NCBI RefSeq assembly: GCF_006345805.1
Contig: NC_043017.1
Coordinates: 5,456,001-5,520,000 of the forward strand
Direction: 5' to 3'
Source: Octopus sinensis
Taxonomy: Eukaryota
Length of the DNA stretch: 64,000 bases
The notes beneath the pieces are model-generated. The model was not told the origin of the DNA and searched no databases. It saw only the letters and a program-made list of their open reading frames with translations. Position numbers and translations under genes: made by a program. Of the stretch, positions 15,930 through 40,650 are shown in pieces. The stretch's first letter is position 1. Each line of letters begins with the position of its first letter.

Positions 15930-16532
15930 TCGCTAAGGGAAATAACTCATACTCGTAATCCAAAATATTTGAAAGAGTTGTCTTTCTTCTTCCCTTGAGT
16001 TCATTCTGACTTCGTGTTTCGACGAAGCATCAACTTTTCTCAGGAGTTCACGAAAATGAATAAAACATCGAAAATATATCCCCGAAGGTAAGTGCATTTT
16101 GTTTCAAAATTTCTTTAAGCTTCTCGCAACAAAACCCTCTCATAAAATTTGATGAAAAAATATACCTTTCATAGTTAAATTGTGTATTTTCTTCTAAATT
16201 GTTTCTATCATAAATTTTCGTCTTTCTGTTTTTAATGTAATAATAAATCTTGAATATTGAAAAAAAAACAAGAAATTTTCACTGAATAATTTTGTTAATG
16301 ACTTGATTTTATCATTTCGCAGGTAAATTTCGCATTTTCTTATGCATTCGTGAAATTACTATCTCACATTTATGTTTTTGAAAGGCATCAATGCTAACAA
16401 CATTTCGATTGTTTTTTCACTGTTATATAAATATTAAGAATATTTTTTTTAAAAAAAAGCATATTTCGAGCGAAAAAGTTTGAAAAAATCTGTCTGGAAA
16501 AAAAAATTTATATATACATGTGTGCGTGCGTG

Positions 16533-16572
<40 letters not shown>

Positions 16573-16596
16573 TGGTGTGTGTGTTTGTGTGTGTGA

Positions 16597-16628
<32 letters not shown>

Positions 16629-17030
16629 GTGTATTTGTTTGTGTGTATGTGTGAGTGTATGTGTGTGTTTGTATGTGTGTGTGTGTGTATGCGTGCGTGT
16701 GTGTGTGTGCGTGTGTGTGCGTGTGAGTGTAAGTGTGTGTGTGTGTTTGTGTGAGTGTAAGTGTGTGTGCGTGCGTGTGTGTGAGGGTGTTGTGTGTGTG
16801 TGTGTGTGTGTGAGATGAAGAAAATTTTTAACAATGTCATGCCATTAATGCAACGAAAAATAGTATTTCTAGTTTTTTAATATCTTTCGTAGAAATATTC
16901 AACGAAAACTTTTTAATAAATTAGTTTATGTGAAATAATAATAAATATCAAACATTTCCTTGATAAAACTGTTAGAAACGGCTTCGTAGCCATATTCTTT
17001 GTCCGAAGATAAAAGTGTCGTCTGCTTCTT
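15930..17030 (+). repeat. Unclassified interspersed repeat, copy 2 (internal TG microsatellite 16515-16812)
   Basis: AAGGGAAATAACTC...TTTCGACGAAGCATCAAC...AAGGTAAGTGCATT and terminal GTCGTCTGCTTC, as in copy 1. Confidence 0.7.
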
Positions 17031-17199
17031 TGAACTGGACTTTTTTTTCTGTCTTTACATTTTGTGCTCAACATTTTTGATCGTTTATGACGAATTCTGC
17101 CCTCGTGTGTTTATACATACATACATATATGTATATCTGTATATATTTTGTCTTTTTTTGTTTTGTTTTTTTGTAAATGTATACAATAATATCATTATT

Positions 17200-17222
17200 A
17201 AGATAAAATATATATGTATATC

Positions 17223-17261
<39 letters not shown>

Positions 17262-17412
17262 TATACGTATATATATGTGTGTGTGTATATATATATATAT
17301 ATAATATATATATAATATACATAAGAAAATATATATATATATATATAATATATATAAGAAAATAAAAAATTTTATCTAATATAGTGGCGTTTTCAACTTC
17401 TTTTTTACAAAT

Positions 17413-17452
<40 letters not shown>

Positions 17453-17658
17453 ATATATATATAATATATAATATAATATATATATACATATATATATATG
17501 TATATATGTATATATATACATATATATATATACGTATATATACGTATATATATGTATATATATTATATATATATATATATATGTATGTATGTACGTATGT
17601 AGTATAGTATATATATGTGTTGTATATATATGTATATATATATTATATATGTATTATA

Positions 17659-17705
<47 letters not shown>
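17200..17705. repeat. (TA)n-rich microsatellite tract
   Basis: Read directly. Confidence 0.9.
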
Positions 17706-17706
<1 letters not shown>

Positions 17707-17730
17707 TTTATTAAATAGCAGCAAAAAATC

Positions 17731-17776
17731 ACAAAACTGTTAGAGTTTCACGTTCCCGTTCGTCGGACAGTTTTGT
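17731..17776 (-). ncRNA. Minimal type I hammerhead-ribozyme-like motif (probable Penelope-like element 3' remnant)
   Basis: Minus strand ACAAAACTGT-CCGACGA-ACG-GGAA-CGT-GAAA-CTCTA-ACAGTTTTGT: 10-bp stem I, CUGANGA-like core with U4C, 3-bp stem II with GNRA loop, GAAA and a vestigial stem III. AATAAA and (AT)n follow. Confidence 0.55.
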
Positions 17777-19027
17777 ATATATATATTTATATACAGTTTT
17801 GCTTAGAATGTATACGTGTGTGTGTGTGTCTGTGTATATTTATCAAATGTCATAAATTATAAGTCTACTTAATGTAAATTGTATATATAATGTTTGCATA
17901 TATTTAGGCATTTATATGTGTGTGTGCGTGCATGTGAAGGATTTTTTTCAAAAGTGTTTTGCAAAAAATGCTTAATATAGTCCTAATGTCTGCAAAAAAT
18001 ATTTTCTTAAAAATTCTTTTGGTTTTTTTTTCTGCTTTGATAACTTTTTGCCGAAACCTTCGCATCAGTCTGTTTTTCTGAGACATTTCTTTAGATTGTC
18101 AATAACTTTTAATGAAATTTTTCTACAAATTTATAGATATAGTTATAGATATCTATAGCTATAGGTATAGATATACATACATACATACATACATACATAC
18201 ATACATACATACATACATACATGTGTGTGTATGTATGTGTATATATATATGAAGAAGAAACATGTATGTGTGTATGTACGGACGGATGTGTATGCATGCA
18301 CACACACATACATACACACACACACACATGCATACAATAGTATCCAATGTCATAAATTATATGTCTACTTAATGTAAATTATATCTGTATATGTTTGCAT
18401 ATGTGGATTTCGAGCCTGTTTACCTGTCGTATAACTTTAGATGTATACATTGGCTAACATGTGTAATATCAGGAAATATTGTATAGAAAAGTTAAAATAT
18501 AACTTTTACCAAATTTCTTGAAAGTTTTATAAAACGATAAAATGAATACTAATTTTCAGAAGAAAAACATATATTTCACCTTCTTGTTTGAATTAAATAT
18601 AACAAAATATTCATTTATATAAGTACACCCATAACTACTGTCATTTGTAAAATAATACAAATATTGGCTGCGTTTTTGTATTTATTATTGGGGAAATGAG
18701 TTTCCAAAACACACACAAAAAGTTGACTATTTTATTCATAACTGTCAGAGAAACATAAAATTTGTGTTAGCCATCTTGTCATTCTGCTGATAAACAGTCG
18801 TCTGCTTATTCCATTTTTGTTTCTTTTTCACATTTTTCACAGTTTTTTATTAATATCTAATGATATCTATATTGAACACTTCTAACAATAACACACATAC
18901 ACATGTACGTATTCATACATTATATATATATATATATAGTTAATCCAAACAAGAAAGCACAAAAAACACAACGCGAGGACGTGGAACAAATATAGTATTA
19001 TTGGACGCTCAGGAAAGAAGGAGGGTT

Positions 19028-19060
19028 TAACGTTTCGAGCGGAGCACTTCATCGGAAACA
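19028..19060 (-). ncRNA. Degenerate minimal hammerhead-like motif (Penelope-like remnant)
   Basis: Minus strand GTTT-CCGATGAA-GTGC-TCC-GCTC-GAAACGTT-AAAC: 4-bp stem I, stem II with one mismatch, palindromic AACGTT stem III, GUU triplet. Confidence 0.45.
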
Positions 19061-19134
19061 TAGGAGAAGGAAAGATCCAGAGAAGGGAAGACAGAGGAAA
19101 AAAAAATCGCCAACGATACACACGAGGTCACATA

Positions 19135-19151
19135 GATACATAGATAGATAA

Positions 19152-19224
<73 letters not shown>

Positions 19225-19420
19225 GATAGATATATACATACATGCATGCATTCATACATACATACATACATCATACATACATACATGCATGCATGCATTC
19301 TTACATACATACATACATGCATGCATGCATGCATGCATGCATGCATGCATACATACATACATACATACATACATACATACATACATGCATGCATGCATGC
19401 ATGCATGCATGCATACATAC
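19135..19420 (+). repeat. (TAGA)n then (CATA/CATG)n microsatellites leading into the giant satellite
   Basis: Read directly. Confidence 0.95.
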
Positions 19421-22400
19421 AAACAAACAAACATATAAACAAGCAAACAAACAAACATACGATCAAATGTAACAAACAAACAAATAAACAAACCAACAAA
19501 CAAACAGGCAAACCAACAAACAAACCAACAAACCAAACAACCAACAAACAAACCAATCAACAAACAAACAAGCCAAGAAACCAACAAACCAACCAACAAA
19601 CCAACCAACACACCAACAAACAAACCAACCAAAAACAAACAAACAAACAAACCAGCAAATAAACCAACAAACAAACTAACAAACCAACCAACAAACAAAC
19701 CAACAAACAAACAAACCAACAGACCAACCAACAAACAAACCGACAAACCTACAAACAAACAAACCAACCAACAAACAAACCAACAAACACACAAACCAAC
19801 AAATATACCAACAAACAAACAAACAAACCAACAAACAAACCTACAAACAAACAAACCAACAAACAAATTAACTAACAACAAACAAACCAACAAACAAATT
19901 AACTAACAAACAAACAAACCAACAAACAAACCCACAAATAAACCAACAAACCAATAAACCAACCAACAAACCAACCAACAAACAAACAGACCCACAAGTA
20001 AACCAACAAACCAACAAACCAATAAACCAACAAACCAACCAACAAACAAACACAACAAACCAACAAACACACAACCACAGCAAACCAACAAACAAACAAA
20101 CAAACCAACAAAAAACCATCCAACAACAAAACCACAACCAACCAACAAATAAACAAACAAACCAAAAAACAAACCAACAAACAAACCAACAAACCAAACA
20201 ACACACCAACAAACAAACCAATAAACAAACAAACCAACAAACAAACAAAGAAACAAACCAACAAATCAAGAAACAAACAAACCAACAAATAAACCAACAA
20301 ACAAACAAACCAACAAACAAACCAACAAACAAACCAACCAACAAACCAACCAACACACCAACAAACAAACCAACCCACAAATCAACAAACAAACCAACAA
20401 ACCAAAAAACAAGCCAATAAACAAACAAACTAATAAACAAACGAACCAACAAACAAACCAACAAACAAACAAACCAACCAACAAATCAACAAACAAACAA
20501 ACAAACAAACCAACAAACAAACAAACAAACCAACCAACAAGTAAACCAAACAACTAACCAACAAACCAACCAACAGACAAACTAACAAACAAACCAACAA
20601 CCAAACCAACAAACCAACAAATAAACCAACAGACCTACAAACAAACAAACCGACAAACCAACAAACCTACAAACAAACAAACCAAACAACAAACAAACCA
20701 ACAAACAAACCAACCAACAAATAAACCAACAAACAAACAAACAAACCTACAAACAAACCAACAAACAAATTAACTAACAAACAAACCGACAAACAAATTA
20801 ACTAACAAACCAACAAACAAACAAACCCACAAATAAACCAACAAACCAATAAACCAACAAACCAACCAACAAACAAACCAACAAACAGACCAACGAACAA
20901 ACAAACCAACCAAATAACCAACCAACAAACAAACAAACCAACAGACAAACCAACAAACCAACCAACAAACAAAACAACAAACCAACCAACAAATAAACGA
21001 ACAAACCAAAAAACAAACCAATAAACAAACATACCAACAAACAAACAACAACAAACACAAACAACCACAAACCAACAACAAACAAACAAACCAACAAATA
21101 AACCAACAAACAAACTAACAAACCAACCAACAAACAAACCAACAAACAAACCGACAAACAAAGAAACCATCAAACAAATTAACTAACAAACAAACAAACA
21201 AACAAATAAATAAACCAACCAACAAACAAACGAACAAACAAACAAACAAACAAACAAACCAACAAACAAACAAACAAACAAACCAACTAACAAACAAACA
21301 AACCAACAAACAAATTAACTAACAAACAAACCAACAAACAAACCAACAAACAAACAAACCAACAAACAAATCAACAGATAAACCAACGAACAAACCGACC
21401 AACAAACAAACAAACCAACCAACAAACAAACAAAACATCAGACAAATTAACTAAGAAACAAACCAACAAACAAATTAACTAACAAACTAACAAACAAACC
21501 AACAGACAAAACTACAAACAAACAAACCAACCAACAAACAAACAAACAAACCAACAGACAAACCAACAAACCAACAAACAAACCAACCAACAAACAAAAC
21601 ATTAAACCAACCAACAAACAAACCAATAAACAAACCGACAAACAAACCAACAAACAAACAAACCAACAAACAAACCAACAAACCTACAAACAAACAAACC
21701 AACAAAGTGATTAACTAACAATAAACAAACCAACAAACAAATAAACCCACAAATAAACCAACAAACCAATAAACAAACAAACCAACCAACAAACAAACAA
21801 ACCCACAAATAAACCAACAACATAATACCCACAAACCACCAAAACAAAAACAAACAAACCCCAGACAAACCAACAAACAAAGAAACAAACCAAAAAACCA
21901 TCCAAACTAATAAACAAACCAACTAATAAACAAATGAACCAACAAACAAACCAACACCAAACAAACAAACAAACAAACAAACAAACAAACAAACCAACCA
22001 ACAGTAAACCAAACAACTAACCAACAAAAAACCAACCAAAGACAAACTAAAACAAACCAACAACGAAACCAACAAACCAACAAATAACCAACAACCTACA
22101 AACAAACAAACCGACAAACCAAAAAACCTACAAACAAATAAACCAACAACAAACAAACAACAACAACACCAACAAACAAACAACCAACAAATAAACCACA
22201 ACAAACAAATTAACTAACAACAAACAAATTAACTAACAAACAAACAAAAACCAACAAACAATAAACCCACAAATAAACCAACAACCAACAACACAATAAA
22301 CCAACAACCAACCATAAACCAAACAACAAACAAACAAACCCGCAAATAAACCAAAAACAATAAAAAACCACAACAACCCACCAACAAACAAACCACAACA

Positions 22401-25400
22401 ACAACAAACCAACAGACAGACCAACAAACAAAGAAACAACAACAACCATCCAACAAACAAAACAAAACCACCAACAAATAAACAAACAACCAATAAAACA
22501 ACCACAACAAACCAACAACCAACCAACAACCAACACACACAAACAAACCAACAAACAAACAAACCAAACAACAAACAACAAACCAACAAATCAAGAAACA
22601 AACAACCAACAAAGAAACCAACAAACAACCACAAACCACAAACAAACCAACCAACAAACAACCAACAAACAAACCAACCACAACCAACCGACACACAAAA
22701 ACAACCCAACCCACAAATAAACAACACACAATAAAACAAACCAAACAAACCAAAACAAGCCAATAAACAAACAAACTAATAAACAAACGAACCAACAAAC
22801 AAACCAACAAACAACAAACAAACCAACCAACAAATCAACAAACCAACAAACAAACAAACAAACAAACAAACAAGGAAATCAACCAACAAGTAAACCAAAC
22901 CTAACCACAACCAACCAACAGACAAAACTAACAAACAAACCAACAGCCAAACCAACAATCCAACAAATAAACCAACAACCTATAAACAACAAACCGACAA
23001 ACCAACAAACCTACAAAAATTAAACCAAACAACAACAAACCACAAACAAACCAACAAACAAACAAAAACCACAAATAAACCAACAAACAAACAACAAACA
23101 AACAACAAACCAACAACAACAAACAAACAATTAACTACCAAACAAACAACCACCAAACAAATAACTAACAAACCAACAAACAACCACAAATAAACCAACA
23201 AACCAACCAACAAACAACCAACAACAAACCACAAACAGACAAACCAACAAATAAACCAACAAACAAACAAACAAACAAACCAACAAACAAACCAACCAAC
23301 AAACCAACCAACACACCAACAAACAAACAACCCCACAAATCAACAAACAAACCAAAAAAACAAACCAACATACCAAAAAACAAGCCAATAAACAAACAAA
23401 CTAATAAACAAACGAACCAACAAACAAACCAACAAACAAACAAAAAACCAACCAACAAATCAACAAACAAACAACAACACACCAACAAGCAAACCAACAA
23501 ACAAACCAACAAACAAACAAACAAACCGACAAACAAAGAAACCATCAAACAAATTAACTAACAAACAAACAAACAAACAAATAAACCAACCAACAAACAA
23601 ACAAACAAACAAACCAACAAGCAAACAAACAAACCAACTAACAAACAAACAAACCAACAAACAAATTAACTAACAAACCAACAAACTAACCAACAAACCA
23701 ACAAACAAACCAACAAACAAACAAACCAACAAACAAACCAACAGATAAACCAACAAACAAACAAACAAACAAACAAACCAACCAACAAACCAACCAACAA
23801 ACAAACCAACGAACAAACCGACCGACAAACCAACAAACAAACCATCAGACAAATTAACTAACAAACAAACCAACAGACAAACAAACAAACTAACCAACAA
23901 ACAAACCAACAAACAAACCGACAAACAACCACACAACAAACCACAAACAAACCAACAACAACCAACCAACCGACAAACAAAGAAACCATCAAACAAATTA
24001 ACTAACAAACAAAGAAACCAACCGACAAACAAAGAAACCATCAAACAAATTAACTAACAAACAAACAAACGAACAAATACACCAACCAACAAACAAACCA
24101 ACAAACAAACAAACAATCCAACAAACATACCAACAAACAAATTAAATAACCAACCCAACAAACAAACCAACAAACAAACCAACAAACAAACAAACCAACA
24201 AACAAACCAACAGATAAACCAACAAACAAACCAACCAACAAACAAACCCACAAATAAACCAACAAACAAACCAACCAACAAACAAACCATGAACACGACC
24301 ACATCCAACAAAAACAAACCAACGAACAACAAACAAACCATCAAACAAATCAACTAACAACTAACAACAAACCAACAAACAAACCTAACAATCAAACAAC
24401 CAACCAACAAAGAAACAAACAAACCAACAGACAAACAACAAACAAACCAACAAACCAACCAACAAACAAAACAACAAACCAACCAACAAACAAACCAACA
24501 AACAAACCGACAAACAAAGAAACCATCAAACAAATTAACTAACAAACAAACAAACAAACCAACAAATAAACCAACCAACAAACAAACAAACCAACAAACA
24601 AAAACCAACCAACAAACAAACAAACCAACAAACAAATTAACTAACAAACCAACAAACAAACCAACAAACAAACCAACAAACAAACAAACCAACAGATTAA
24701 TCAACAAACAAACAAACCAACAAACAAACAAACAAACCCACAAAAAACAACAACAAACAAACAAACCAACAGACAAACCAACCAACAACAACAAACCAAC
24801 CAACAAACAAACACAAACAACTAACAAACAACCTACTACAAACAAACCGACAAACAAACCAACAAACAAACCAAACAAACCAACAAACAAACAACAAAAC
24901 AAGCAACAAACAAACAAACCAAAAACAATTAACTAACAAACCAACAACAAACAACAACAAACCAACCAACCAACAAACAAAAACAACCATTTTACAATTA
25001 ACTTACAAACAAAACCAACAAACAACCACAAACAAACGAAAACCCACAAATAAACCAACAAACAATAACAAACCAACAGACAAACCAACAAGAAACAAAC
25101 AAACCAACAAACAAAACAACAAAACAACAAACCTACAAACAAACCGACAAATAAACCAACAAACAAACCAACAGATAAACCAACAAACAAACAAACAAAC
25201 AAACAAGCCAACAAACAAACCAACAAACAAATTAACTAACAAACCAACAAACAAACCGACAAATAAACCAACCAACAAACAAACCAACAAACAAACAAAC
25301 AAACCAACAAACCAACAAAACATCAAACCAACCAACAAACAAACCTACAAACAAACCGACAAACAAACCAACAAACAAACCAACAGATAAACCAACAAAC

Positions 25401-28400
25401 AAACAAACAAACAAACAAACAAGCCAACAAACAAACAAACCAACAAACAAATTAACTAACAAACCAACAAACAAAACAACAAACAAACCGACCAACAAAC
25501 AAACAAACCATTTTACAAATTAACTTACAAACAAACCAACCAACAAACAAAACAACAAACCAACCAACAAACAAACCTAGAAACAAACCACAAATAAAAC
25601 CAACAACAACCAACAATAAACCAACAACAAACAAACAAACAACAAACAAGCCAACAAAAAACAAACAACCAACAAAACAATTAACTAACAAACAAACAAA
25701 CAACCCGACATAAACCAACCAACAAACAAACCAACAAACAAACCATCAAACCAACAAACAAAGAAACCCACAAACAAACAACCACAAACCAACAACAAAT
25801 TAACTAACAAACCAACAATCAAAGCACAAACAAACCAACAAACAAACAAACCAACACATAAACCCAACGAACAAACAAACCAACAACAACAAACACCCAC
25901 AAATAAACCAACAAAGAACAAACCAACAGACAAACCAAAAACAACAAAACAACCACCAACCAACAAAACATCAAACCAACCAACAAACAACCTACAAAAA
26001 CAACAAACAACAACCAACAAACAAACCAACAGATAAACCAACAAACAAACAAACAAACAAACAAACAAACAAACCAAAAAAACAAACCAACATACCAAAA
26101 AACAAACCAATAAACAAACAAACTAATAAACAAACGAACCAACAAACAAACCAACAAACAAACAAACAAACCAACCAACAAATCAACAAACAAACAAACC
26201 AACACACCAACAAGCAAACCAACAGACAAACCAACCAACAAACCAACAAACAAACAAACAAACCGACAAACAAAGAAACCATCAAACAAATTAACTAACA
26301 AACAAACAAACAAACAGATAAACCAACCAACAAACAAACGAACCAACAAACAAACAAACAAACAAATGAAGGAACAAGCAACAAACAACCAACTAACAAA
26401 CAACCAACAAACAAATTAACTAACAAACCAACAACACACCAACAATCAACCAACAACAAACAACCAACAACAAACAAAACCAACCACAACCAACCAACAA
26501 AACAAACCAACAAACCACAACAACCAACACAACAACAAAAAACCAACAAACAAACCAACCAATAAACCAACAACAAACAAACCAACCAACAAACAAACCC
26601 ACAAATAAACCCAACAAACAAACCAACCAACAACCACCAATGAACACAACCGACCAACATCCAACAAACAAACAACCAACCAACAAACAAACAAAAACCA
26701 TCAGACAAATCAACTAACAACTAACAAACAAACCAACCAACCAACAAACCTACAAACAAACAAACCAACCAACAAACAAACAAACAAACCAACAGACAAA
26801 CCAACAAACAAACCAACAAACCAACCAACAAACAAAACAACAAACCAACCAACAAACAAACCAACAAACAAACCGACAAAAAACCAACAAACAAACAAAC
26901 CAACCGACAAACAAAGAAACCATCAAACAAATTAACTAAGAAAGAAACAAACAAACCAACAAATAAACCAACCAACAAACAAACAAACCAACAAACAAAC
27001 AAACCAACCAACAAACAAACAAACCAACAAACAAATTAACTAACAAACCAACAAACAAACCAACAAACAACCAACAAACAAACAACCAACACAAAACCAA
27101 CAATAAATCAACAACCAACCAACAACAACAAACCACCAATAAAAACCAACAAACAAACAAACAAACCAACAGACAAACCAACCAACAAACAAACAACCCA
27201 ACCAACAAACAAAACAACACCAACCAACAAACAACCTACAAACAAACCGACAAACAACCCAACAAACAAACCAAACAGATAACCCATCAAACAAACAAAC
27301 AAACAACAAACAAGCCAACAAACAAACAAACCACCAACAAATTACCTAACAAACCAACAAACAAACCAACAAACAACCGACCAACAAACCAACAAACAAA
27401 CAAAACCATTTTACAATTAACTTACCAATAAACCAACAACCAACCAACAAACAAACAACCCACAAATAAACCAACAACAAACAAACAAACCAACAGATAA
27501 CCAACAAACAAGCCAACAAAACAAACAACCAACAAACAATAACTAACAAAACAACAAACAAACCGACCAACAAGCCAACAAACAAACAAACCTTTTACAA
27601 ATTAACTAACAAACAAACCAACAAACCAACCAACAAACAAACGAACCCACATATAAACCAACAAACAAACAAACAAACCAACAGACAAACCAACAAACAA
27701 ACAAACAAACCAGCCAACAAACAAAACAACAAACCAACCAACAAACAAACCTACAAACAAACCGACAAACAAACCAACAAACAAACCAACCAACACACCA
27801 ACAAACAAACCAATAAACAAACAAACCAACAAACAAACAAACAAACCAACAAATCAAGAAACAAACAAACCACAAAAGAAACAACAAAGAACCAACAAAC
27901 AAACACAAACACAAACAAACACCAACACAAAACCAACCACCACCAACCAACCAACACACCAACAACAAACCAACCACAAATCCAAAAAAAAAAAAACAAA
28001 CAAACAAACCAAATAACAAACCAACAACCAAAAACAAGCCAATAACAAACATACTAATAAGCAAACGAACTAACAAACAAACAAACAAACAAACAAGCAA
28101 ATCAACCAACACGTAAACCAAACAACTAACCAACAAACCAACCAACAGACAAACTAACAAACAACCAACAACCAACCAACAAACCAACAAATAACCAACA
28201 GACCTACAAACAAACAAACCGACAAACCAACAAACCTACAAGGAAATAAACCAAAACAACCAACAAACCAACAAACAACCAACAAACAAACAAACCAAAC
28301 AATAAACCAACAAACAACAAACAAACAAACCAACAAACCTACAACAAACAACAAACAAATTAACTAACAAACAAAAACCACAACAAATTAACTAAACAAA

Positions 28401-31400
28401 CCAACAAACAAACCCACAAATAAACCAACAAACCAACAAACCAACCAACAAACAAACCACAACAAACCAACAAACAAACAAACCAACAATAAACCAACAA
28501 CACAAACAACAAACAACCCAACAAACACACCAACCAACACCAACCAACACACCAACCAAACAACCAACCCACCAATCAACAAACAAACCAAAAAAACAAA
28601 CCAACATACCAAAAAAAACCAACATAAACAAAACAAACTAATAAACAAACGAACCAACAAACAAAAACAAACCAACAACAACAAAAAAACCAACCAACAA
28701 ATCAACAAACAAACACAACACCACCAACAAACAAACACACACAACAAAACAAACCAACAAACAAACAAACAAACCGACAAACAAAGAAACCATCAAACAA
28801 ATTAACTAACAAACAAACAAAACAAATAAACCAACCAACAAACAAACGAACCAACAAACAAACAAACAAACAAACCAACAAGCAAACAAACAAACCAACT
28901 AACAAACAAACAAACCAACAAACAAATTAACTAACAAACCAACAAACTAACCAACAAACCAACAAACAAACCAACAAACAAACAAACCAACAAACAAACC
29001 AACAGATAAACCAACAAACAAACAAACAAACAAACAAACCAACCAACAAACCAACCAACAAACAAACCAACGAACAAACCGACCGACAAACCAACAAACA
29101 AACCATCAGACAAATTAACTAACAAACAAACCAACAGACAAACAAACAAACTAACCAACAAACAAACCAACAAACAAACCGACAAACAAACCAACAAACA
29201 AACCGACAAACAAACCAACAAACAAACAAACCAACCGACAAACAAAGAAACCATCAACACATTAACAACAACAACAAACCAAACCGACAAACAAGAAAAC
29301 CATCAAACAAATTAACTAACAAACACAACAACGAAACAAATAAACCAAAAACCAACAAACAAAAACCAACAAACAAACAAACAATCAACAAACAAACCAA
29401 CAAACAAATAAATAACAAACCACAAACAACCAACAAACAAACAAACCAACAACAAACCAAAGATAAACCAACAAACAAACCAACCAACAACAACCCACAA
29501 ATAAACCCAACAACAAACACCAACCAAAAACAAACCAATGAAACAAACCGACCACCATCCAACAAACAAACAACTAAAACGAACAAACAAACAAACCATC
29601 AAACAAATCAACTAACAAACTAACAAACAAACCAACAAACAAACCTACAATCAAACAAACCAACCAACAAACAAACAACAAACCAACAGACAACCAACAA
29701 ACAAATCACAAAACCAACAAACAAAACAACAAACCAACCAACAAACAAACAAACAAACCGACAACAAAGAAACCATCAAACAATTAACTAACAAACAAAC
29801 AACAAACCAACAATAACCAACCAACAAACAACAAACCAACAAACAACAAACCAACCAACAACAACAAACCAACGAACAAATTAACTAACAAACACAAACC
29901 AACAAACAAACCAACAACAACCAACAAACAAACACCACCAGATTAATCAACAAACAAAACAAACCAACAAACAAACCAAACAACCCACCAAACCAAACCA
30001 ACAAAAAACAAACAACCAACAGACAAACCAACAAACAAACAAACAAACCAAACCAACCACCAACAAAACAACAAACCAACCAACAAACAAACCTACACCA
30101 AACCGACAAACAACCAACAAACAAACCAACCAACAACAAACAAACCAACAAACAAACAACAAGCCAACAAACAAACAAACCAACAAACAAATTAACTAAC
30201 AAACCAACAACACACAACAAACAAACCAACCAACAAACCAACAAACAAACAACCATTTTACAAATTAACTTACAACAACCAACAAAACCAACCAACAAAC
30301 AAACGAACCCACATAACCAACCAACAAATAAACAACCAACAGACAAACCACAAACAAACAAACAACAAACCCAACCAACAAACAACCTACAAACAAACCG
30401 ACAAATAACCAACAAACAACCAACCAGATAACCAACAACAAACAACAAACAAACAAGCCAACAAACAAACCAACAAACAAATTAACTACAAACCAACAAA
30501 CAAACCGACAAATAAACCAACCAACAAACAAACCAACAAACAACAACAAACCAAACCACAAACCAACAAACATCAACCAACCAACAAACAAACCTACAAA
30601 CAACCGACAACAAACAACAACACCACAGATAAACCAACCAACAAACAAACCCACACCAACAAACACAACCAACAAACAAACAAACCAACAAACAATAACT
30701 AACAAACCACAAAACAAAACAACAAACCAACGACCAACAAACAAACAAACCATTTTACAAATTAACTTACCACACAACCAACCAACAAACAAAACAACAA
30801 CCACACCAACAAACAAACATAAAACAAAACCGACAAATAAACAACAAACAAACCAACAATAAACCAACAAACAAACAAACAACAACAAACAAACCAACAA
30901 ACCAAAACCCTTAACTAACAAACAACACAACCCGACAAATAAACCACCAACAAACAAAAACCAACAAACAAAAACAAACAAACCCTCAAACCAACAAACA
31001 AAACAAACAACACACACAAACAAACAAACCAACAAACAAATTAACTAACAAACCAACAATCAAAGCAACAAACAAACCAACAAACAAACAAACCAACACA
31101 TAAACCAACGAACAAACAAACCAACCAACAAACAAACAAACCCACAAATAAACCAACAAACAAACAAACCAACAGACAAACCAACAAACAAACAAACAAA
31201 CCAACCAACAAACAAAACATCAAACCAACCAACAAACAAACCTACAAACAAACCGACAAACAAACCAACAAACAAACCAACAGATAAACCAACAAACAAA
31301 CAAACAAACAAACAAACAAACAAACCAAAAAAACAAACCAACACACCAAAAAACAAGCCAATAAACAAACAAACTAATAAACAAACGAACCAACAAACAA

Positions 31401-34400
31401 ACCAACAAACAACAACAAACCCAACCAACAAATCAACAAACAACCAAACCAACACACCAACAAGCAAACCAACAGACAAACCAACCAACAAACCAACAAA
31501 CAAACAAACAAACCGACAAACAAAGAAACCATCAAACAAATTAACTAACAAACAAACAAACAAACAGATAAACCAACCAACAAACAAACGAACCAACAAA
31601 CAAACAAACAAACAAACGAAGCAACAAGCAAACAAACAAACCAACTAACAAACAAACCAACAAACAAATTAACTAACAAACCAACAAACACACCAACAAT
31701 CAAACCAACAAACAAACAAACCAACAAACAAACAAACAAACAACCAACAAACCAACCAACAAACAAACCAACAAACCAACAAACAAACCAACAAACAAAC
31801 AAACCAACAAACAAACCAACAGATAAACCAACAAACAAACAAACCAACCAACAAACAAACCCACAAATAAACCAACAAACAAACCAACCAACAAACAAAC
31901 CAATGAACAAACCGACCAACATCCAACAAACAAACAAACCAACCAACAAACAAACAAACCATCAGACAAATCAACTAACAAACTAACAAACAAACCAACA
32001 AACAAACCTACAAACAAACAAACCAACCAACAAACAAACAAACAAACCAACAGACAAACCAACACACAAACCAACAAACCAACCAACAAACAAAACAACA
32101 AACCAACCAACAAACAAACCAACAAACAAACCGACAAACAAACCAAAAATCAAACAAACCAACCGACAAACAAAGAAACCATCGAAAAAATGAACTAACA
32201 AACAAACGAACAAACCAACAAATAAACCAACCAACAAACAAACAAACCAACAAACAACAACAACCACAAACAAACACCAACAACAAATTAACTAAACAAA
32301 CAACCAACAAACAAACCAACAAACAAACAACAAACAAACAAACCAAAAAAACAAACCAACAGATAATCACAAAAACCAACCACAACAAACAAAACAACCC
32401 ACAAATAAACCAACAAACAACAACCAACCAACAGACAAACCAACAAACAACAACCAAACCAACCAACAAACAAAACAACAACCACCAACAAACAACCTAC
32501 AAACAAACCGACAAACAAAACCAACAAACCAACAGATAAACCATCAAACAAACAACAACCAACAAACAACCAACAACCAACAAACCCAACAAAAATTACT
32601 AACAAACCAACAAACAAACCAACAAACAAACCGACCAACCAACCAACAAACAAACAAACCATTTTACAAATTAACTTACCAATAAACCAACAAACCAACC
32701 AACAAACAAACAAACCCACAAATAAACCAACAAACAAACAAACAAACCAACAGATAAACCAACAAACAAACAAACAAGCCAACCAACAAACAAACCAACA
32801 AACAAATTAACTAACAAAACAACAAACAAACCGACCAACAAGCCAACAAACAAACAAACCATTTTACAAATTAACTAACAAACAAACCAACAAACCAACC
32901 AACAAACAAACGAACCCACAAATAAACCAACAAACAACAAACAAACCAACAAACAAACAAACAAACCAACCAACAAACAAAACAACAAACCAACCAACAA
33001 ACAAACCTACAAACAAACCGACAAACAAACCAACAAACAAACCAACAAACCAACCAACACACCAACAAACAAACCAATAAACAAACAAACCAACAAACAA
33101 ACAAACAAACCAACAAATCAAGAAACAAACAAACCAACAAAGAAACCAACAAAGAAACCAACAAACAAACAAACAAACCAACCAACAAACAAACCAACCA
33201 CCAAACCAACCAACACACCAACAAACAAACCAACCCACAAATCAACAAACAAACCAAATAACAAACCAACAAACCAAAAAACAAGCCAATAAACAAACAA
33301 ACTAATAAACAAACGAACCAACAAACAAACAAACAAACAACCAACAAATCAACAAACCAACAAACAAACAAACAAACAAACAAGCAAATCAACCAACAAG
33401 TAAACCAAACAACTAACCAACAAACCAACCAACAGACAAACTAACAAACAAACCAACAACCAAACCAACAAACCAACAAATAAACCAACAGACCTACAAA
33501 CAAACAAACCGACAAACCAACAAACCTACAAACAAATAAACCAAACAACAAACAAACCAACAAACAAACCAACAAACAAACAAACCAACAAATAAACCAA
33601 CAAACAAACAAACAAACAAACCAACAAACCTACAAACAAACCAACAAACAAATTAACTAACAAACAAACAAACCAACAAACAAATTAACTAACAAACCAA
33701 CAAACAAACCCACAAATAAACCAACAAACCAACAAACCAACAAACAAACAAACCAACAAACAAACCAACAAACAAACAAACCAACAAATAAACCAACAAA
33801 CAAACAAACAAACAAACCAACAAACAAACCAACCAACAAACCAACCAACACACCAACAAACAAACCAACCCACAAATCAACAAACAAACCAAAAAAACAA
33901 ACCAACATACCAAAAAACAAGCCAATAAACAAACAAACTAATAAACAAACGAACCAACAAACAAACCAACAAACAAACAAACAAACCAACCAACAAATCA
34001 ACAAACAAACAAACCAACACACCAACAAGCAAACCAACAAACAAACCAACCAACAAACCAACAAACAAACAAACAAACCAACAAACAAAGAAACCATCAA
34101 ACAAATTAACTAACAAACAAACAAACAAACAAATAAACCAACCAACAAACAAACGAACCAACAAACAAACAAACAAACAAAGCAACAAGCAAACAAACAA
34201 ACCAACTAACAAACAAACCAACAAACAAATTAACTAACAAACCAACAAACAAACCAACAAACCAACCAACAAACAAACCAACAAACAACAAACCAACAAA
34301 CAAACAAACCAACAAACAAACCAACAGATAAACCAACAAACAAACAAACCAACCAACAAACAAACAAACCCACAAATAAACCAACAAACAAACCAACCAA

Positions 34401-37400
34401 CAAACAAACCAATGAACAAACCGACCAACATCCAACAAACAAAGAAACCAACCAACAAACAAACCATCACACAAATCAACTAACAAACTAACAAACAAAC
34501 CAACAAACAAACCTACAAACAAACAAACCAACCAACAAACAAACAAACAAACCAACAGACAAACCAACAAACAAACCAACAAACCAACCAACAAACAAAA
34601 CAACAAACCAACCAACAAACAAACCAACAAACAAACCGACAAACAAACCAACAAACAAACAAACCAACAAATAAACCAACCAACAAACAAACAAACCAAC
34701 AAACAAACAACCCAAACCAACAAACAACAAACCAACAACAAATTAACTAACAAACCAACAAACAAACCAACAAACAACCACAACAACCAACAAACAAACC
34801 AACAGATAAATCAACAAACCAACACCAACCAAAACAAACAAACAAACCCACAAATAAACCAACAAACAACCAACAACCAACCACAACACACAACAAACCA
34901 ACACAAACAAAAACAACAAACCAACCAACAAACAAACCTACAAACAAACCGACAAACAAACACCAAAACAACAAACCACCAGATAAACCAACAAACAACA
35001 AAACAACAAACAAACAAACACCAACAAACAAACAAACCAACAAACAAATTAACTAACAAACCAACAAACAAACCAACAAACAAACAAACCATTTTACAAA
35101 TTAAGACCAATAAACAACAAACCAAACCAACAAACAAACAAAACGAACCCACAAATAAACCAACAACAAACAAACCACCAACAAACAAACCAACACAAAC
35201 CAACCAACAATAACCTACAAACAAAACACAAATAAACCAACAAAAAACCAACAGATAACCAACAAACAAACAAAACAAACAACAAGCCAACAAACAAACA
35301 AACCAACAAACAATTAACTAACAACCAACAAACAAACCAACAAATAAACCACCACAAACAAAACAAAACAACCAACAAACAAACAAACCAACCAACAAAC
35401 AAACAAACCAACAGATAAACCAACAAACAAACAAACCAACCAACAAACAAACAAACCCACAAATAAACCAACAAACAAACAAACCAACAGACAAACCAAC
35501 AAACAAACAAACAAACCAACCAACAAACAAAACAACAAACCAACCAACAAACAAACCTACAAACAAACCGACAAACAAACCAACAAACAAACCAACAGAT
35601 AAACCAACAAACAAACAAACAAACAAACAAACAAACAAACAAGCCAACAAACAAACAAACCAACAAACAAATTAACTAACAAACCAACAAACAAACCAAC
35701 AAACAAACCGACCAACAAACCTACAAACAAACAAACCATTTTACAAATTAACTAACAAACAAACCAACAAACAAACGAACCCACAAATAAACCAACAAAC
35801 AAACAAACCAACAAACAAACCAACAGATAAACCAACAAACAAACAAACCAACCAACAAACAAACAAACCCACAAATAAACCAACAAACAAACCAACAGAC
35901 AAACCAACAAACAAACAAACAAACCAACCAACAAACAAAACAACAAACCAACCAACAAACAAACCTACAAACAAACCGACAAACAAACCAACAAACAAAC
36001 CAACAGATAAACCAACAAACAAGCAAACAATCAAACAAACAAACAAACAAGCCAACAAACAAACAAACCAACAAACAAATTAACTAACAAACCAACAAAC
36101 AAACCAACAAACAAACCGACCAACAAACCAACAAACAAACAAACCATTTTACAAATTAACTAACAAACAAACCAACAAACCAACCAACAAACAAACGAAC
36201 CCACAAATAAACCAACAAACAAACAAACAAACCAACAGACAAACCAACAAACAAACAAACAAACCAACCAACAAACAAACCTACAAACAAACCGACAAAC
36301 AAACCAACAAACAAACCAACAGATAAACCAACAAACAAACAAACAAACAAACAAGCCAACAAACAAACAAACCAACAAACAAATTAACTAACAAAACAAC
36401 AAACAAACCGACCAAAACAAACACAAACAACAAACCATTTTACAAATTAACCAACAAACAAACAACCCACAAAAACCAACAAAAACAACAAACCAACAGT
36501 CAACCAACAAACCAAACAAACAAACCAACCAACAAACAAAACAAAACAAACCAACCAACAAACAAACCTACAAACAAACCGACAAACAAACCAACAAACA
36601 AACCAACAGATAAACCAACAAACAAACAAACAAACAAACAAACAAGCCAACAAACAAACAAACCAACAAACAAATTAACTAACAAACCAACAAAGAAACC
36701 AACAAACAAACCGACCAACAAACCAACAAACAAACAAACCATTTTACAAATTAACTAACAAACAAACCAACCAACAAACCAACAAACACACCATCAAACA
36801 AATTAACTAACAAACAAACAAACCAACAAATAAACCAACAAACCAACCAACAAACCAACAATCAAACCAACAAACCTACAAACAAACCAACCTAACAAAC
36901 CAACAAACAAACAAACAAGCAAACCATCAAACCAACAAACAAACAAACAACCCAATAAACAAACAAACCAACAAACAAATTAACTAACAAACCAACAAAC
37001 AAACCAATAAACCAACAAACAAACAAACCAACAGACAAACCCATAAACAAACAAACCCACAAATAAACCAACAAACAAACCAACAAACCAACCAACAAAC
37101 AAACCAACAAACAAACCGACAAACAAACCAACAAACAAACAAGCCATGAAACAAATTTACTAACAAACAAATTAACTAGCAAACTAACAAACAAACTAAC
37201 AAACAAACCTACAAAGAAACAAACCAACCAACAAAGAAACAAACAAACAACCCAACAAACAAATTAACTAACAAACAACAAACCAATAAACAAACAAACC
37301 AACAAACAAACAAACCAACAAACAAACCAACAGACAAACCAACAAACAAACAAACTAGCCAACCAACAAACCAACCAACAAACCAACAATCAAACCAACA

Positions 37401-37510
37401 AACCTACAAACAAACCAACCTAACAAACCAACAAACAAAGAAACTAAACAAACAAGCAAACCATCAAACCGACAAACAAACCAACAAACAACCAAACAAA
37501 CGAAGAAACA
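19420..37510 (+). repeat. ~18-kb degenerate (AAAC/AACC)n satellite with higher-order structure
   Basis: Plus strand is almost entirely A and C. Recurrent punctuation motifs include AAATTAACTAACAAA, CCCACAAATAAACC, CAGATAAACC, ACCTACAAAC and CATTTTACAAATT. Rare landmarks recur at ~5.2-5.3 kb. Confidence 0.97.
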
Positions 37511-39159
37511 AACATTATTCGTCTTCACTTCGAAACCAAACATCTCTCAACACATTCTAAATATTGTTGAAAGTTGTGGTCCAATATATTTGAATCTATG
37601 AAATGTAGTTTGGAATCTCAGAGGAATCTCTTTAAGAAAATGTTTGTTGAAAATGAATCTATCATTCATGTAAGTTACAAAATAGCAAATAAGTTGACAG
37701 AGCAAGAAAAGCCATTTACTGACGGAAATTTTATAAAAGAGTGCATAATGGAAGCAGCAAATGACTTGTGTCCTGTAAAAGCTAACATATTTGGCCGTGT
37801 CAGCCTTTCAGCAAGTTCAGTTGTGCGGAGAATAGAAGAACTTGGAGAGAATATACTTTTACAGATACATGAGAAAGCTAAGAAATTTTTGTGGTATTCT
37901 CTTGCAATGGATGAGTCTACTGATCACTATAGTACGTCACAACTTCTTGTGTTCATTTGTGATGTTAATTAAAACATTGAGACTATAGAAGAAATGGCAT
38001 CCGTTTGCAGTATACATGGAACAAAAACTGGAGAAGATATTTTCATAGAGGTCCAGAAAACTTTGCAAAATTATAACCTTCAGTGGAATCAGCTTCGGTG
38101 TGTTACAGTCGATGGCAGAAAAACATGGCAGGTGTGAGGAAAGGTTTGGTAGGGCGGATCCAGACCAAGTTGGAGGAGCTTCAACTTCAAAAAGCTCTGT
38201 TTATACACTGCATTATACATCAGCAAGCACTCTGTAGAAAACAGTTATTTTTTGCGTACTAAAACCGGTTACAACTGTGGTGAACTTTATTTGGAATCAT
38301 GGGCTTAATCAACGACAGTTCCAGGCCTTCCTTAAAGAAATGGATTCTAATTTCTGTGATTTGTCTTACTACACAGAAAGGAGATGGCTCAGTTGCAGTA
38401 AAGTCCTGTTTCATTTTTATAAGCTCCGAAGAGAAACAGATCTTTTTCTCACTGAAAAGAATAGAGCTGATCCACAGCTGTCAGATCCTTCATGGTTATC
38501 AAAGTTGTCATTTCTAGTTCCCATATGAATGAATTGAATTTAAAACTGCAAGGAAAGAATAACCTTGTCTGTGATCTCTACAGAATTATTACAGCATTTC
38601 GGAGAAAGCTATCATTGTTTGAAGCACAACTTGAAGGAGGAAACTTCTCTCATTTTTAGTGTTTTCAAGAGTTTTGCACAGAAAATGTGGAGCATGTTAA
38701 CTGCAAGTTTCAGGAAAAATTATTCAAGACTTAAGCTATTTTCTCAAAGATTTTCAGATCTTGACATAATTAAGAATGAAATTCTTTTGTTTGAGAATCC
38801 CTTTAGCTGTAATCTTGATAACATGCCAACTGAACTACAACTGGAACTTATTGACTTGTAAGCTAATGCCTTGTTGAAAGAGAAGCACAGAGAAGGAAAA
38901 CTCATTGAATTTTATCGCTGCTTACCTGTTGATGAGTTTTCAAAATTGAAAAAACTTACCTCAGGTATGGCATCAGTTTTTGGAACAACCTATGTTTGTG
39001 AGCAAACTTTTTTCAAAACTGAAGTGTGTGAAGTCAATACATGGAACAAGGCTCACTGATGAACATTTGAAAGCAATTCTTATGGTTGGCTGCAGCAATC
39101 ATAAAGCAAATGTTGATGATATTTTGGAAGCAAAATGCCATTTTCACAAATTTCATTAA
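37510..39159 (+). pseudogene. hAT-superfamily transposase pseudogene (GTF2IRD2/SPIN/Charlie-like), 5'-truncated
   Basis: Fragments in shifting frames: RLHFETKH (distal half of BED finger), KPFTDGNFIKEC, SLAMDESTD (first D), VTVDG (second D), HCIIHQQAL (CxxH), ERRWLSCSK, FGTTYVCEQTF (catalytic E), LTDEHLKAIL; stop at 39157-39159. Multiple stops and frameshifts. Confidence 0.92.
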
Positions 39160-39374
39160 CTTTTGTGCTGCTTACTTTATATGCAATTCAGCTATGTGTG
39201 CACTTTTACTAAAAATTCTAACTTGGTAATATTTTGGTATTATTAAAATACATTTATTGTTTTTATTATTTTGTGTATTGTATGTATTGATAAATAAATA
39301 GGATAACTTGTCTTTATTTTTTGTGTACATTCAGTGTATTCTATATTGTACTGAACTGAACAAAATATTTATCC

Positions 39375-39438
39375 GGCCCACACTTGGCATTCTTTTAGCT
39401 ATATCTGGCCCACTATGAAAATAGTTTGGTAACTCCTG
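39375..39438 (+). mobile_element. Right end and TIR of the hAT element
   Basis: CCGGCCCAC...CTGGCCCACTATGAAAATAGTTTGGTAACTCCTG; the reverse complement CAGGAGTTACCAAACTA resembles Charlie/SPIN-type TIRs, with GGCCC subterminal motifs. Confidence 0.7.
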
Positions 39439-39656: not shown

Positions 39657-40650
39657 ACATTGATAAAGAAGTCTCACTAAAGATTTTTAGTGTCAACTGG
39701 CTTGTTGTTATATGCCCATCAAGTTCAGGAATGAATAAAAGCAAATAATATTATAGAAAAGCAAAAAAATTAAATATGAACATGGAAATCATGTGTTCCG
39801 ATTAAGATAAAATTGCCTAATCAGCTTTCGCTGTCATAACTGCTTAGAGGGAAAAGAAAGTAGGAGAAAGGAAGGTATAGGAAATTTTTTATCAGGTGGT
39901 GCTATTAAGTTAGACATGGCCTGGACCAATCTTTGGTCGAAACATATCTAAGTTTATCTAAGTTTAATACTTAGACAAGTAGTTTCATGTTCGTGCATAT
40001 ACACACACACATACATTATATATATATATATATATATATAATGTGAATGTGTGTGTCTGTCTTTGTGTGTGTGTATCTGGGTCTATGTACATATCTATAT
40101 GCATCTTTTTATGTGTATGTGTATACGTGTCTATATGCACATGTGTACCTACATATGAGTTTGTGTCTATATATGTGCATGTATGTATGTATGTCGTACT
40201 GGCTTTCATGGGAAACATGTATCTTCGTGGTTGAAACCTTTTGGATTAACTGGTGCTAGAGTGAGCAATATATTGACCACTCTCTTATATTTGTTTTGTA
40301 AAAGTATTGTAATATGTTATAAAATATTATAATAATCCAGGTTTCTCGTAGCACTAGGCCACTTGGTGTTGAATAAATATACTATTAAATTAGTATCTAA
40401 TTCTCTCACCCTTATTAATTAATTATGTATATATATATATATATACAGATACACATATACACACACATGTATATATACATACATATACATATATGCACAT
40501 ACATATATGAACATAACAAAATCATATATGTAGGTACACATGTGCATATACACATATATGCACATACACACACAGATGCATATAGATATGTACATAGACC
40601 CATATACACAAAGACAGACAGACACACACACATTATACACAACACACATG

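What the first reader, a model, noticed from the sequence alone, without database searches (positions are those of the whole stretch)
19420..37510. 18-kb A/C-only satellite with hierarchical organisation
This is the most unusual structure in the window, with three levels. Level 1 is the 4-nt AAAC/AACC base unit. Level 2 is a small vocabulary of fixed variant words, with AAATTAACTAACAAA recurring about every 100-300 bp. Level 3 is kilobase periodicity. CATCC landmarks at 24302, 26658, 29556, 31920 and 34429 are spaced 2356/2898/2364/2509, with pairs 5254 and 5262 apart. GTAAACCAAAC at 22890, 28113 and 33400 is spaced 5223/5287. This implies about three copies of a ~5.25-kb higher-order repeat with ~2.4 and ~2.9 kb halves. 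Extreme strand skew means any transcript would be a very long GU-rich or AC-rich unstructured RNA able to bind many proteins, as with Drosophila Y-loop satellites (analogy only).
Basis: partly seen in the sequence, partly recalled or inferred. Interest (0 to 1): 0.7.

Follow-up and report, generated by a model that had tools for sequence, protein, structure and literature searches.

The report
Degenerate AAAC microsatellite array with internal duplications
An 18-kb run of imperfect CAAA/CCAA four-base repeats has grown out of an ordinary compound microsatellite and contains a duplicated 5.25-kb block; this is a known kind of simple-sequence satellite, and its fine detail may be partly sequencing noise.

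Summary
One period-4 array runs from 19415 to 37514. It is 94.5% A+C, not A/C-only, and 65% of its words are CAAA or CCAA. The recurring variant words are real. The kilobase periodicity is also real. Segments 22849-27905 and 28072-33171 share 250 of about 285 rare G/T bases (Jaccard 0.78, against 0.13-0.20 for control segments).

The structure is a dimer of two roughly 2.6-kb unit types. It is present as two full copies, not three, flanked by hybrid units on each side. A 290-650 bp tandem forms the 3' tail.

The array continues without a break from a (GATA)n/(ACAT)n/(GCAT)n microsatellite. The best reading is in-place microsatellite expansion followed by segmental duplication through unequal exchange, with no sign of function. 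I found no transcription evidence and no related array elsewhere.

One caveat is important. Differences between the copies are mostly 1-bp A-run length changes and A<->C swaps. They occur in patches, are private to each copy, and violate a molecular clock (40 and 48 private changes against 7). This looks like uncorrected long-read error, so copy identity is underestimated, and array length and copy number need raw reads to confirm. It is a new member of a known kind and of low interest.

The parts
19130..19414 (+). Compound microsatellite (GATA)n, (ACAT)n and (GCAT)n that runs directly into the array
   Evidence: Sequence read. TRF row 19130-19460, period 4, ACAT, 90% matches. ACAT remnants persist in the first 60 bases or so of the array.
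19415..37514 (+). The whole degenerate (CAAA/CCAA)n array, 18.1 kb and 94.5% A+C
   Evidence: TRF, composition. Word spectrum: CAAA 1835 and CCAA 951 of 4271 words, with 75% of words 4 nt long. CCAA is preferentially spaced 12 nt apart.
20150..22539 (+). U0: older hybrid unit with an odd-type head and an even-type tail
   Evidence: 20153-21369 vs 33009-34288 is 86%. Lag +12860 for 20012-20800 and lag +13001/+10496/+5235 for 21362-21700. Rare-base Jaccard 0.22-0.28 to U1/U3/U5.
22540..27780 (+). Higher-order copy A, made of U1 (22540-25261, odd type) and U2 (25262-27780, even type)
   Evidence: 22849-27905 vs 28072-33171: 5251 columns, 89%. Identity is 96.1% in aligned columns and 250 rare bases are shared. 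U1-U3 Jaccard is 0.67 and U2-U4 is 0.78.
27781..33076 (+). Higher-order copy B, made of U3 (27781-30512, odd type) and U4 (30513-33076, even type)
   Evidence: Same alignments as copy A. 23612-23911 and 28873-29172 are 100% identical.
33077..34860 (+). U5: partial third unit and a recombinant. Its head matches U1/U3 and from about 33800-34100 onward it matches U2/U4.
   Evidence: Best lags change from -5287/-10522 to -2564/-2509/-7815 along 33362-34412. 28072-29051 vs 33359-34361 is 91.8%. There is an internal 635-bp duplication.
35089..37042 (+). 3' tail: local tandem with units of 647, 408, 291 and 304 bp, marked by CCATTTTAC, plus the unit that follows the last marker. Related to 25.1-25.5 kb and 31.0-31.4 kb.
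   Evidence: CCATTTTAC at 35089, 35736, 36144, 36435 and 36739. 35462 vs 35882 is 99% over 288 bp, with lags of -4315 and -10212. The end coordinate is approximate.
21912..23411 (+). Frame-broken ('dirty') patch. Others lie at 27912-28911 and 29412-30911. They carry many 3-nt CAA words and may be consensus error.
   Evidence: Only 0.55-0.66 of words are 4 nt long here, against 0.84-0.91 in clean stretches. Private changes in the three-way alignment: A 40, B 48, C 7.
37515..39400 (+). Right flank: abrupt end of the array, followed by a decayed reading frame with stops and frameshifts that looks like a transposase
   Evidence: Sequence and three-frame translation. Pfam gave no significant match, so the hAT-like identity rests on my memory only.

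Best explanation
This is a non-coding simple-sequence satellite array that arose in place from a compound tetranucleotide microsatellite.

Proposed history:
1. An (ACAT)n tract mutated to (ACAA)n and grew by replication slippage.
2. Point changes such as CAAA to CCAA, CTAA, CCGA and AAATTAAC created marked words.
3. Blocks carrying those marks were then copied at larger scales (12 nt, about 0.3-0.6 kb, about 2.6 kb, 5.25 kb) by unequal crossing-over or replication-based segmental duplication.
4. The result is a dimeric higher-order repeat (odd unit plus even unit) in two copies.
5. The hybrid units at both ends are what exchange within the core shared by the two unit types would produce.

The anatomy and the common descent of the copies are shown directly. 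The mechanism of copying and the absence of function are inferred.

Much of the apparent 11% difference between copies is probably uncorrected long-read error rather than divergence.
For: - There is one period-4 array.
- The (GATA/ACAT/GCAT)n tract passes into the array without a break, with ACAT remnants in the array's first 60 bases or so.
- The surrounding 20 kb is full of ACAT/ATGT, TG and AT microsatellites, so this genome makes such tracts readily.
- Copies A and B share 250 of 291/279 rare G/T bases (Jaccard 0.78), against 0.13-0.20 for non-homologous segments of equal length.
- The unit similarity matrix alternates: U1-U3 0.67 and U2-U4 0.78, with odd-even pairs at 0.12-0.23.
- CCAACTAACAAAC occurs once in each of six units.
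- The best-match lag of U5 switches from the odd type to the even type within the shared core, and U0 has the same hybrid layout.
- There is a local 290-650 bp tandem at the 3' end.
- About 76% of all G/T bases sit in 18 word types (my sum from the counts).
- No Rfam family matches. ORFs are confined to the G/T strand, as expected from composition alone.
- Human simple-sequence arrays longer than 10 kb are already reported to show domain and higher-order organisation (PMC2588610). Growth of short repeats into longer units by repeated duplication and unequal crossing-over is the standard model (PMC5615363).
Against: - Only two full higher-order copies exist, so homogenisation, the hallmark of a mature higher-order satellite, cannot be shown.
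- No second locus or relative of this array was found. 'Satellite' in the genome-wide sense is therefore unproven.
- The differences between copies do not look like ordinary mutation. There are 215 indels, of which 143 are 1 bp and only 4 are multiples of 4. Of 192 substitutions, 142 are A<->C and only 26 are transitions.
- This means part of what is being explained may be technical.
Confidence: 0.7

Rival explanations
1. The picture is partly an assembly artefact. A real A/C-rich tetranucleotide tract exists here. Its assembled length, its number of 5.25-kb copies and its frame-breaking irregularities would then come from assembling or gap-filling low-complexity DNA with noisy long reads that could not be polished inside the repeat.
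For: - Differences between A and B are dominated by 1-bp indels (143 of 215). 126 are homopolymer-length changes, 106 of them in A runs.
- In a three-way alignment of homologous segments, private changes number A 40, B 48 and C 7. No clock-like tree fits this. The clean copy C keeps a perfect 4-nt frame.
- Frame-breaking density is patchy. It is uncorrelated between homologous positions of A and B (rho 0.12) and anticorrelated with A-B identity (rho -0.66, p 0.001).
- Clean stretches of paralogues are 97-100% identical.
- Elsewhere the window is clean. The 199-bp and 19-bp tandem repeats have 0% indels, and reading frames of 621 and 318 codons at 57.5-60.7 kb are unbroken.
Against: - The two copies differ by real-looking private rare-base changes and by larger indels (5 to 13 bp).
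- They are not identical in length.
- The hybrid units U0 and U5 are not simple copies of A or B.
- An assembler that simply duplicated a block would give near-identical copies.
- No reads are available, so this cannot be tested here.
Confidence: 0.22
2. It is a functional element. The array would be transcribed into a long unstructured AC-rich or GU-rich RNA, or would act at the DNA level as a dense platform for proteins that recognise ACAAACA-type sites (the forkhead core RYMAAYA, or SOX-type AACAAAG). It would sequester or concentrate those proteins, as proposed for some transcribed simple satellites.
For: - Both strands are predicted to be unstructured as RNA.
- The forkhead core pattern RYMAAYA occurs 109 times per kb in the array, against 6.4 per kb on both strands outside it. 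AACAAAG occurs 30 times.
- A conserved gene lies about 20 kb away on the minus strand, at 57495-60661. Read-through or an intronic position is therefore conceivable.
Against: - The motif density follows automatically from the repeat unit.
- There is no expression data, no promoter evidence and no conservation of the array in any collection searched.
- The internal structure is what neutral duplication predicts.
Confidence: 0.05
3. It is the tail or cargo of a mobile element. The array would be an over-grown 3' microsatellite tail of a retrotransposon, or a tandem array carried by a DNA transposon. The decayed transposase-like frame begins 60 bases after the array ends.
For: The array ends abruptly at 37514, and a decayed transposase-like frame starts at about 37574. 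Retroelement fragments lie nearby at 8972-9472 and 40425-41228, judged by me from the translations.
Against: - The left end grades into an ordinary microsatellite rather than into an element body.
- No array remnant lies beyond the right-hand element.
- Pfam did not confirm the identity of any flanking fragment.
- No other copies were found.
Confidence: 0.03

Closest known systems
Large human 'simple sequence' arrays (>10 kb) with domain or higher-order organisation, such as GAATG/CATTC-derived satellites (Warburton et al. 2008, PMC2588610)
   Same: A very short base unit, an array of tens of kilobases, degenerate copies, and a kilobase-scale repeat superimposed on the simple repeat and attributed to unequal crossing-over.
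   Different: Those families occur at many loci and in much larger amounts, usually pericentromeric. Here a single 18-kb locus is known, flanked by microsatellites, mobile-element debris and a gene. The unit (CAAA/CCAA) is different.
Alpha-satellite-type higher-order repeats (dimeric or multimeric units, reviewed in PMC5615363)
   Same: Alternating unit types in which units one period apart are far more alike than neighbours (rare-base Jaccard 0.67-0.78 against 0.12-0.23). Hybrid units suggest unequal exchange.
   Different: The repeating units here are 2.35-2.75 kb blocks of degenerate tetranucleotide repeat, not nucleosome-sized monomers. Only two full copies exist. There is no evidence of a centromeric role.
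Compound tetranucleotide tract of the human CNBP intron, (TG)n(TCTG)n(CCTG)n, which expands to tens of kilobases in myotonic dystrophy type 2 (from my own knowledge, not checked here)
   Same: A tetranucleotide tract sitting at the end of a compound microsatellite has grown to the 10-kb scale.
   Different: Disease expansions are nearly pure and unstable. This array is heavily interrupted (72% matches) and carries old internal duplications, so it is a fixed, decayed structure.
   Same: Short A-rich unit with strong strand asymmetry.
   Different: Those are megabase blocks in heterochromatin or in giant introns, with documented strand-specific transcription. None of that is shown here.

Membership tests
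Satellite DNA with higher-order repeat organisation | Head-to-tail tandem array of a basic unit | tested here: met
   TRF finds period 4, 4544 copies and 72% matches. Identity at lag 4 is 0.72.
Satellite DNA with higher-order repeat organisation | Units one higher-order period apart are more alike than adjacent units | tested here: met
   Rare-base Jaccard is 0.67 for U1-U3 and 0.78 for U2-U4. It is 0.14 for U1-U2, 0.23 for U2-U3 and 0.23 for U3-U4.
Satellite DNA with higher-order repeat organisation | Many homogenised copies of the higher-order unit | tested here: not met
   Only two full copies, plus hybrid partial units U0 and U5.
Satellite DNA with higher-order repeat organisation | Family abundant in the genome or present at several loci | not testable with these tools
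   The source genome is not available. A 21-mer word gave only isolated chance hits in microbial and metagenome collections. A protein-level search gave only generic hits.
Microsatellite (simple sequence repeat) | Unit of 1-6 bp | tested here: met
   Period 4.
Microsatellite (simple sequence repeat) | Short array, classically under 1 kb (definition quoted in PMC5615363) | tested here: not met
   The array is 18.1 kb.
Transcribed simple satellites of the Drosophila Y-loop type | Lies in a giant intron, is transcribed from one strand, and binds specific RNA-binding proteins | not testable with these tools
   No expression or gene-model data. Only the absence of RNA secondary structure could be computed.
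Interstitial telomeric repeat | Runs of the telomere unit (TTAGGG, TTAGG, TTAGGC or their complements) | tested here: not met
   No run of three or more units of any of these anywhere in the window.
Known structured RNA families (Rfam) | Match to a covariance model at its gathering score | tested here: not met
   0 matches in the whole window.

The most novel reading that the evidence does not exclude
The patchy, copy-private, frame-breaking 1-bp changes could be real rather than technical. They would then record error-prone copying, for example break-induced or template-switching replication, which is known to be frameshift-prone. In that case each duplication event stamped a burst of mutations onto the new copy while the template stayed clean. 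The array would be a natural record of mutagenic segmental duplication in simple-sequence DNA.
Probability: 0.07. Interest if true: 0.55.

Novelty: new member of a known kind. Interest (0 to 1): 0.2.

Why it matters
As biology it matters little. It is one more example of a microsatellite growing into a small satellite array with kilobase-scale internal duplications. That process is already described, and no function is indicated here.

It is useful in two practical ways:
- It gives a compact worked example of the intermediate stage between microsatellite and satellite. All levels are visible in one locus: 4 nt, 12 nt, 0.3-0.6 kb, 2.6 kb and 5.25 kb, with recombinant units at both ends.
- It flags a likely local quality problem in the assembly. 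Patches at 21.9-23.4, 27.9-28.9 and 29.4-30.9 kb have an error-like signature. Anyone using this region for repeat-length, copy-number or divergence estimates should know this.

Tried and rejected
- **Plain lag autocorrelation.** Over all bases or over rare bases it gave only a weak bump near 5250, because indels blur the register. Rare k-mer lags and alignments were needed.
- **TRF.** It reported nothing beyond period 4 inside the array.
- **The repeat finder on the tail.** It was swamped by the 4/8/12-nt register, reporting 185 'copies'.
- **Controls overlapping copy A.** Two of my control segments (starts 20500 and 25400) overlapped copy A and matched themselves. I ignored them.
- **Exact 21-mer scans.** JGI metagenomes gave 16 hits, one genome per bacterial or archaeal species gave 3, and viral contigs gave 0. 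All hits were isolated chance matches with local A+C of 0.49-0.65, none in an array.
- **Protein-level search with a G/T-strand ORF (34106-34786).** It gave 5 weak hits. The one I inspected (L024) is an unrelated (GCTT/GTTT)n microsatellite in a contig of 43% GC. L025 was fetched but not examined.
- **Naming the organism.** Homologues of the conserved ORF 59705-60661 are unnamed, and their run accessions appear in no paper. The window is best described as an animal-like eukaryote with GC 32.7%, CpG observed/expected 0.52 and very many microsatellites.
- **Pfam.** It gave nothing for the flanking ORFs or for the decayed transposase-like frame.
- **Coding potential of the array.** Rejected. The long ORFs on the minus strand follow from a G/T-only strand lacking stop codons.
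- **Telomere-derived origin.** Rejected.
- **Stable G-quadruplex on the G-rich strand.** There are no runs of three G, only 59 weak two-G patterns.
Full report
**What is there**

The window is eukaryotic and animal-like. GC is about 33%, CpG observed/expected outside the array is 0.52, and microsatellites of the ACAT/ATGT, TG, AT and GATA types are very dense. No Rfam family matches anywhere in the window.

Between 19412 and 37524 every 100-bp window is more than 85% A+C. GC skew is about -0.9 and AT skew about +0.9. TRF reports one array at 19415-37514, period 4, consensus ACAA, about 4544 copies, 72% matches and 4% indels.

The array is therefore 94.5% A+C, not A/C-only.

I split the sequence into words that begin at each C run. 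This gives 4271 words: 1835 CAAA and 951 CCAA, with 75% of words exactly 4 nt long. CCAA words are preferentially 12 nt apart (19% observed against 13.5% expected from random word order), so CCAACAAACAAA is a weak super-unit.

**Variant words**

AAATTAACTAACAAA occurs 49 times, all on the + strand and all inside the array. Shuffles of the window give 0.01 on average. Its spacing runs from 19 to 1325 bp.

The word sits in at least three longer recurring contexts:
- one preceded by GAAACCATCAAAC
- one preceded by CAAGCCAACAAACAAACAAACCAACAAAC
- one preceded by CCATTTTAC

So it marks duplicated segments rather than acting as independent punctuation. By my sum of the counts, about three quarters of all G/T bases fall in 18 word types.

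**Kilobase periodicity**

Simple lag correlation is weak because indels shift the register. Pairs of rare 20- to 48-mers, however, concentrate at lag 5250, with lesser peaks at 12850, 10500, 7550-7800 and 2350-2700. The binned dot matrix shows the corresponding diagonals.

Self-BLAST gives one dominant alignment, 22849-27905 against 28072-33171. It spans 5251 columns at 89% identity and scores 2952 bits. No other pair exceeds 950 bits, and arbitrary parts of the array align at 82-83%.

In a global alignment the two blocks are 96.1% identical in aligned columns. They share 250 of their 291 and 279 G/T bases (Jaccard 0.78). Non-overlapping control segments of the same length give 0.13-0.20. The duplication is therefore real in this sequence.

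**Finer structure**

A sliding 300-bp comparison and a unit matrix show six units of 2.35-2.75 kb. The 13-mer CCAACTAACAAAC occurs exactly once in each, at 21283, 23634, 26389, 28895, 31641 and 34202.

The unit similarities alternate:
- U1-U3 Jaccard is 0.67 and U2-U4 is 0.78.
- Odd-even pairs give 0.12-0.23, against a background of 0.10-0.14.

The 5.25-kb repeat is thus a dimer (odd plus even) present in two full copies.

The third 'copy' (U5, 33077 to about 34860) is a recombinant. Its head matches the odd units (lags -5287 and -10522). From about 33800-34100 onward it matches the even units (lags -2564, -2509 and -7815). The switch falls in a core of about 1 kb that both unit types share.

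U0 (about 20150-22539) has the same hybrid layout and is most similar to U5 (86% over 1.3 kb). The last 2.4 kb contains a local tandem with units of 647, 408, 291 and 304 bp marked by CCATTTTAC. Two of its stretches are 99% identical.

It also omitted in-array landmark sites that did not fit: CATCC at 20117, 21899 and 22447, and GTAAACCAAAC at 20541 and 22004.

**Origin**

The left edge is not a boundary in kind. A (GATA)n tract is followed by (ACAT)n and (GCAT)n, which change into (ACAA)n at 19415-19420. ACAT remnants persist in the first 60 bases or so of the array.

The right edge is abrupt at 37514. It is followed by a decayed reading frame with stops and frameshifts. From memory I take this for a hAT-type transposase relic, but Pfam did not confirm it.

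This anatomy fits the standard route from microsatellite to satellite:
1. slippage growth of a mutated tetranucleotide tract
2. accumulation of marked variants
3. successive duplications of larger and larger blocks by unequal exchange

The model is summarised in PMC5615363. Warburton et al. reported that human simple-sequence arrays above 10 kb often have domain or higher-order organisation (PMC2588610). The hybrid units are what unequal exchange within the shared core would produce.

**The caveat: error-like differences between copies**

Between A and B there are 215 indel events and 192 substitutions. Of the indels, 143 are 1 bp, 45 are 2 bp, and only 4 are multiples of four. Of the 215, 126 are homopolymer-length changes, 106 of them in A runs. 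Of the substitutions, 142 are A<->C and only 26 are transitions. Only 69 of 587 differing columns involve G or T. Neither slippage of a tetranucleotide repeat nor ordinary point mutation predicts this spectrum.

Frame-breaking words are patchy. Stretches such as 21912-23411, 27912-28911 and 29412-30911 have only 55-66% four-letter words and 14-21% CAA words. Clean stretches have 84-91% and 1-3%.

In a three-way alignment of homologous segments the private changes number 40 (A), 48 (B) and 7 (C). C keeps a perfect 4-nt frame. No clock-like tree gives two long tips and one very short one.

Frame-breaking density is uncorrelated between homologous positions of A and B (rho 0.12). It is anticorrelated with A-B identity (rho -0.66, p 0.001). 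Clean paralogous stretches are 97-100% identical.

Elsewhere the window is clean. The 199-bp and 19-bp tandem repeats have 0% indels, and reading frames of 621 and 318 codons are unbroken.

The simplest reading is that patches of the array carry uncorrected long-read consensus or gap-fill error. The 89% identity is then a lower bound, and the assembled length and copy number need confirmation from reads. A less likely alternative is that the bursts are real and were introduced by error-prone copying.

**Function**

Nothing indicates function. The long ORFs are all on the G/T strand and follow from the lack of stop codons there. Both strands are predicted to be unstructured as RNA, at 0 and -1.2 kcal/mol per 300 nt and no better than shuffles.

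The forkhead-type core RYMAAYA occurs 109 times per kb, but that follows automatically from the unit. No three-G runs exist for stable quadruplexes and no telomere units are present.

A conserved gene lies on the minus strand at 57495-60661 and has an 80% identical homologue in other samples. Whether the array lies in its transcript cannot be told.

**Distribution**

An exact 21-mer from the punctuation context gave only isolated chance hits. There were 16 in JGI metagenomes, 3 in the bacterial and archaeal genome set and none in viral contigs, and none lay in an A/C-rich tract. These collections are microbial, so this is weak evidence.

A protein search with a G/T-strand ORF found only generic tetranucleotide-repeat translations. 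The one I inspected is an unrelated (GCTT/GTTT)n tract.

The organism could not be named.

**Verdict**

The array is a new member of a known kind, a microsatellite-derived simple-sequence array with a dimeric higher-order duplication. It carries a probable local assembly-quality problem. Interest is low.

Noticed in passing
window 37515-39400 (+): A decayed reading frame with several stops and frameshifts lies directly after the array. Its translation reminds me of domesticated or hAT-type transposases (for example '...TRLTDEHLKAILMVGCSNHKANVDDIL...'). Pfam gave no significant match.
   Followed up: partly
window 57495-59360 (-) and 59705-60661 (-): Two long unbroken ORFs of 621 and 318 aa, probably exons of one gene. 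The first is rich in Q, N, S and P runs. The second has 13 unnamed homologues (best 80% identity) in Logan, ENA and JGI data. Neither has a Pfam domain.
   Followed up: partly
window 10726-11485: Tandem repeat of a 199-bp unit, 3.8 copies, 97% matches, no indels.
   Followed up: no
window 3963-4277: A 19-bp minisatellite (ATATGGACCCTCAGGAGCC), 16.6 copies, 88% matches. It produces overlapping repetitive ORFs.
   Followed up: no
window 5600-19460: An unusually dense field of microsatellites. (ACAT)n lies at 8699-8911, 9589-9755, 13743-14089 and 19130-19460. Its complement (ATGT)n lies at 14952-15631. There are also (TG)n, (AT)n and (ATAG)n tracts. Opposite-orientation ACAT/ATGT tracts a few kb apart could pair as long imperfect inverted repeats.
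   Followed up: no
window 8972-9472 (-) and 40425-41228 (+): ORFs whose ends look to me like C-terminal parts of non-LTR retrotransposon proteins (for example '...GRGRPRKTWDEVVKNDLRTLGLTEEMTRDRDLWKYAV...'). Pfam found nothing.
   Followed up: partly
window 23612-23911 vs 28873-29172: 300 bases are 100% identical between the two higher-order copies, while neighbouring stretches are 87-94% identical. This is either recent gene conversion or simply the best-polished part of both copies.
   Followed up: partly
window 41459-41559: A 47-bp unit repeated 2.1 times in a locally GC-rich (46%) kilobase.
   Followed up: no
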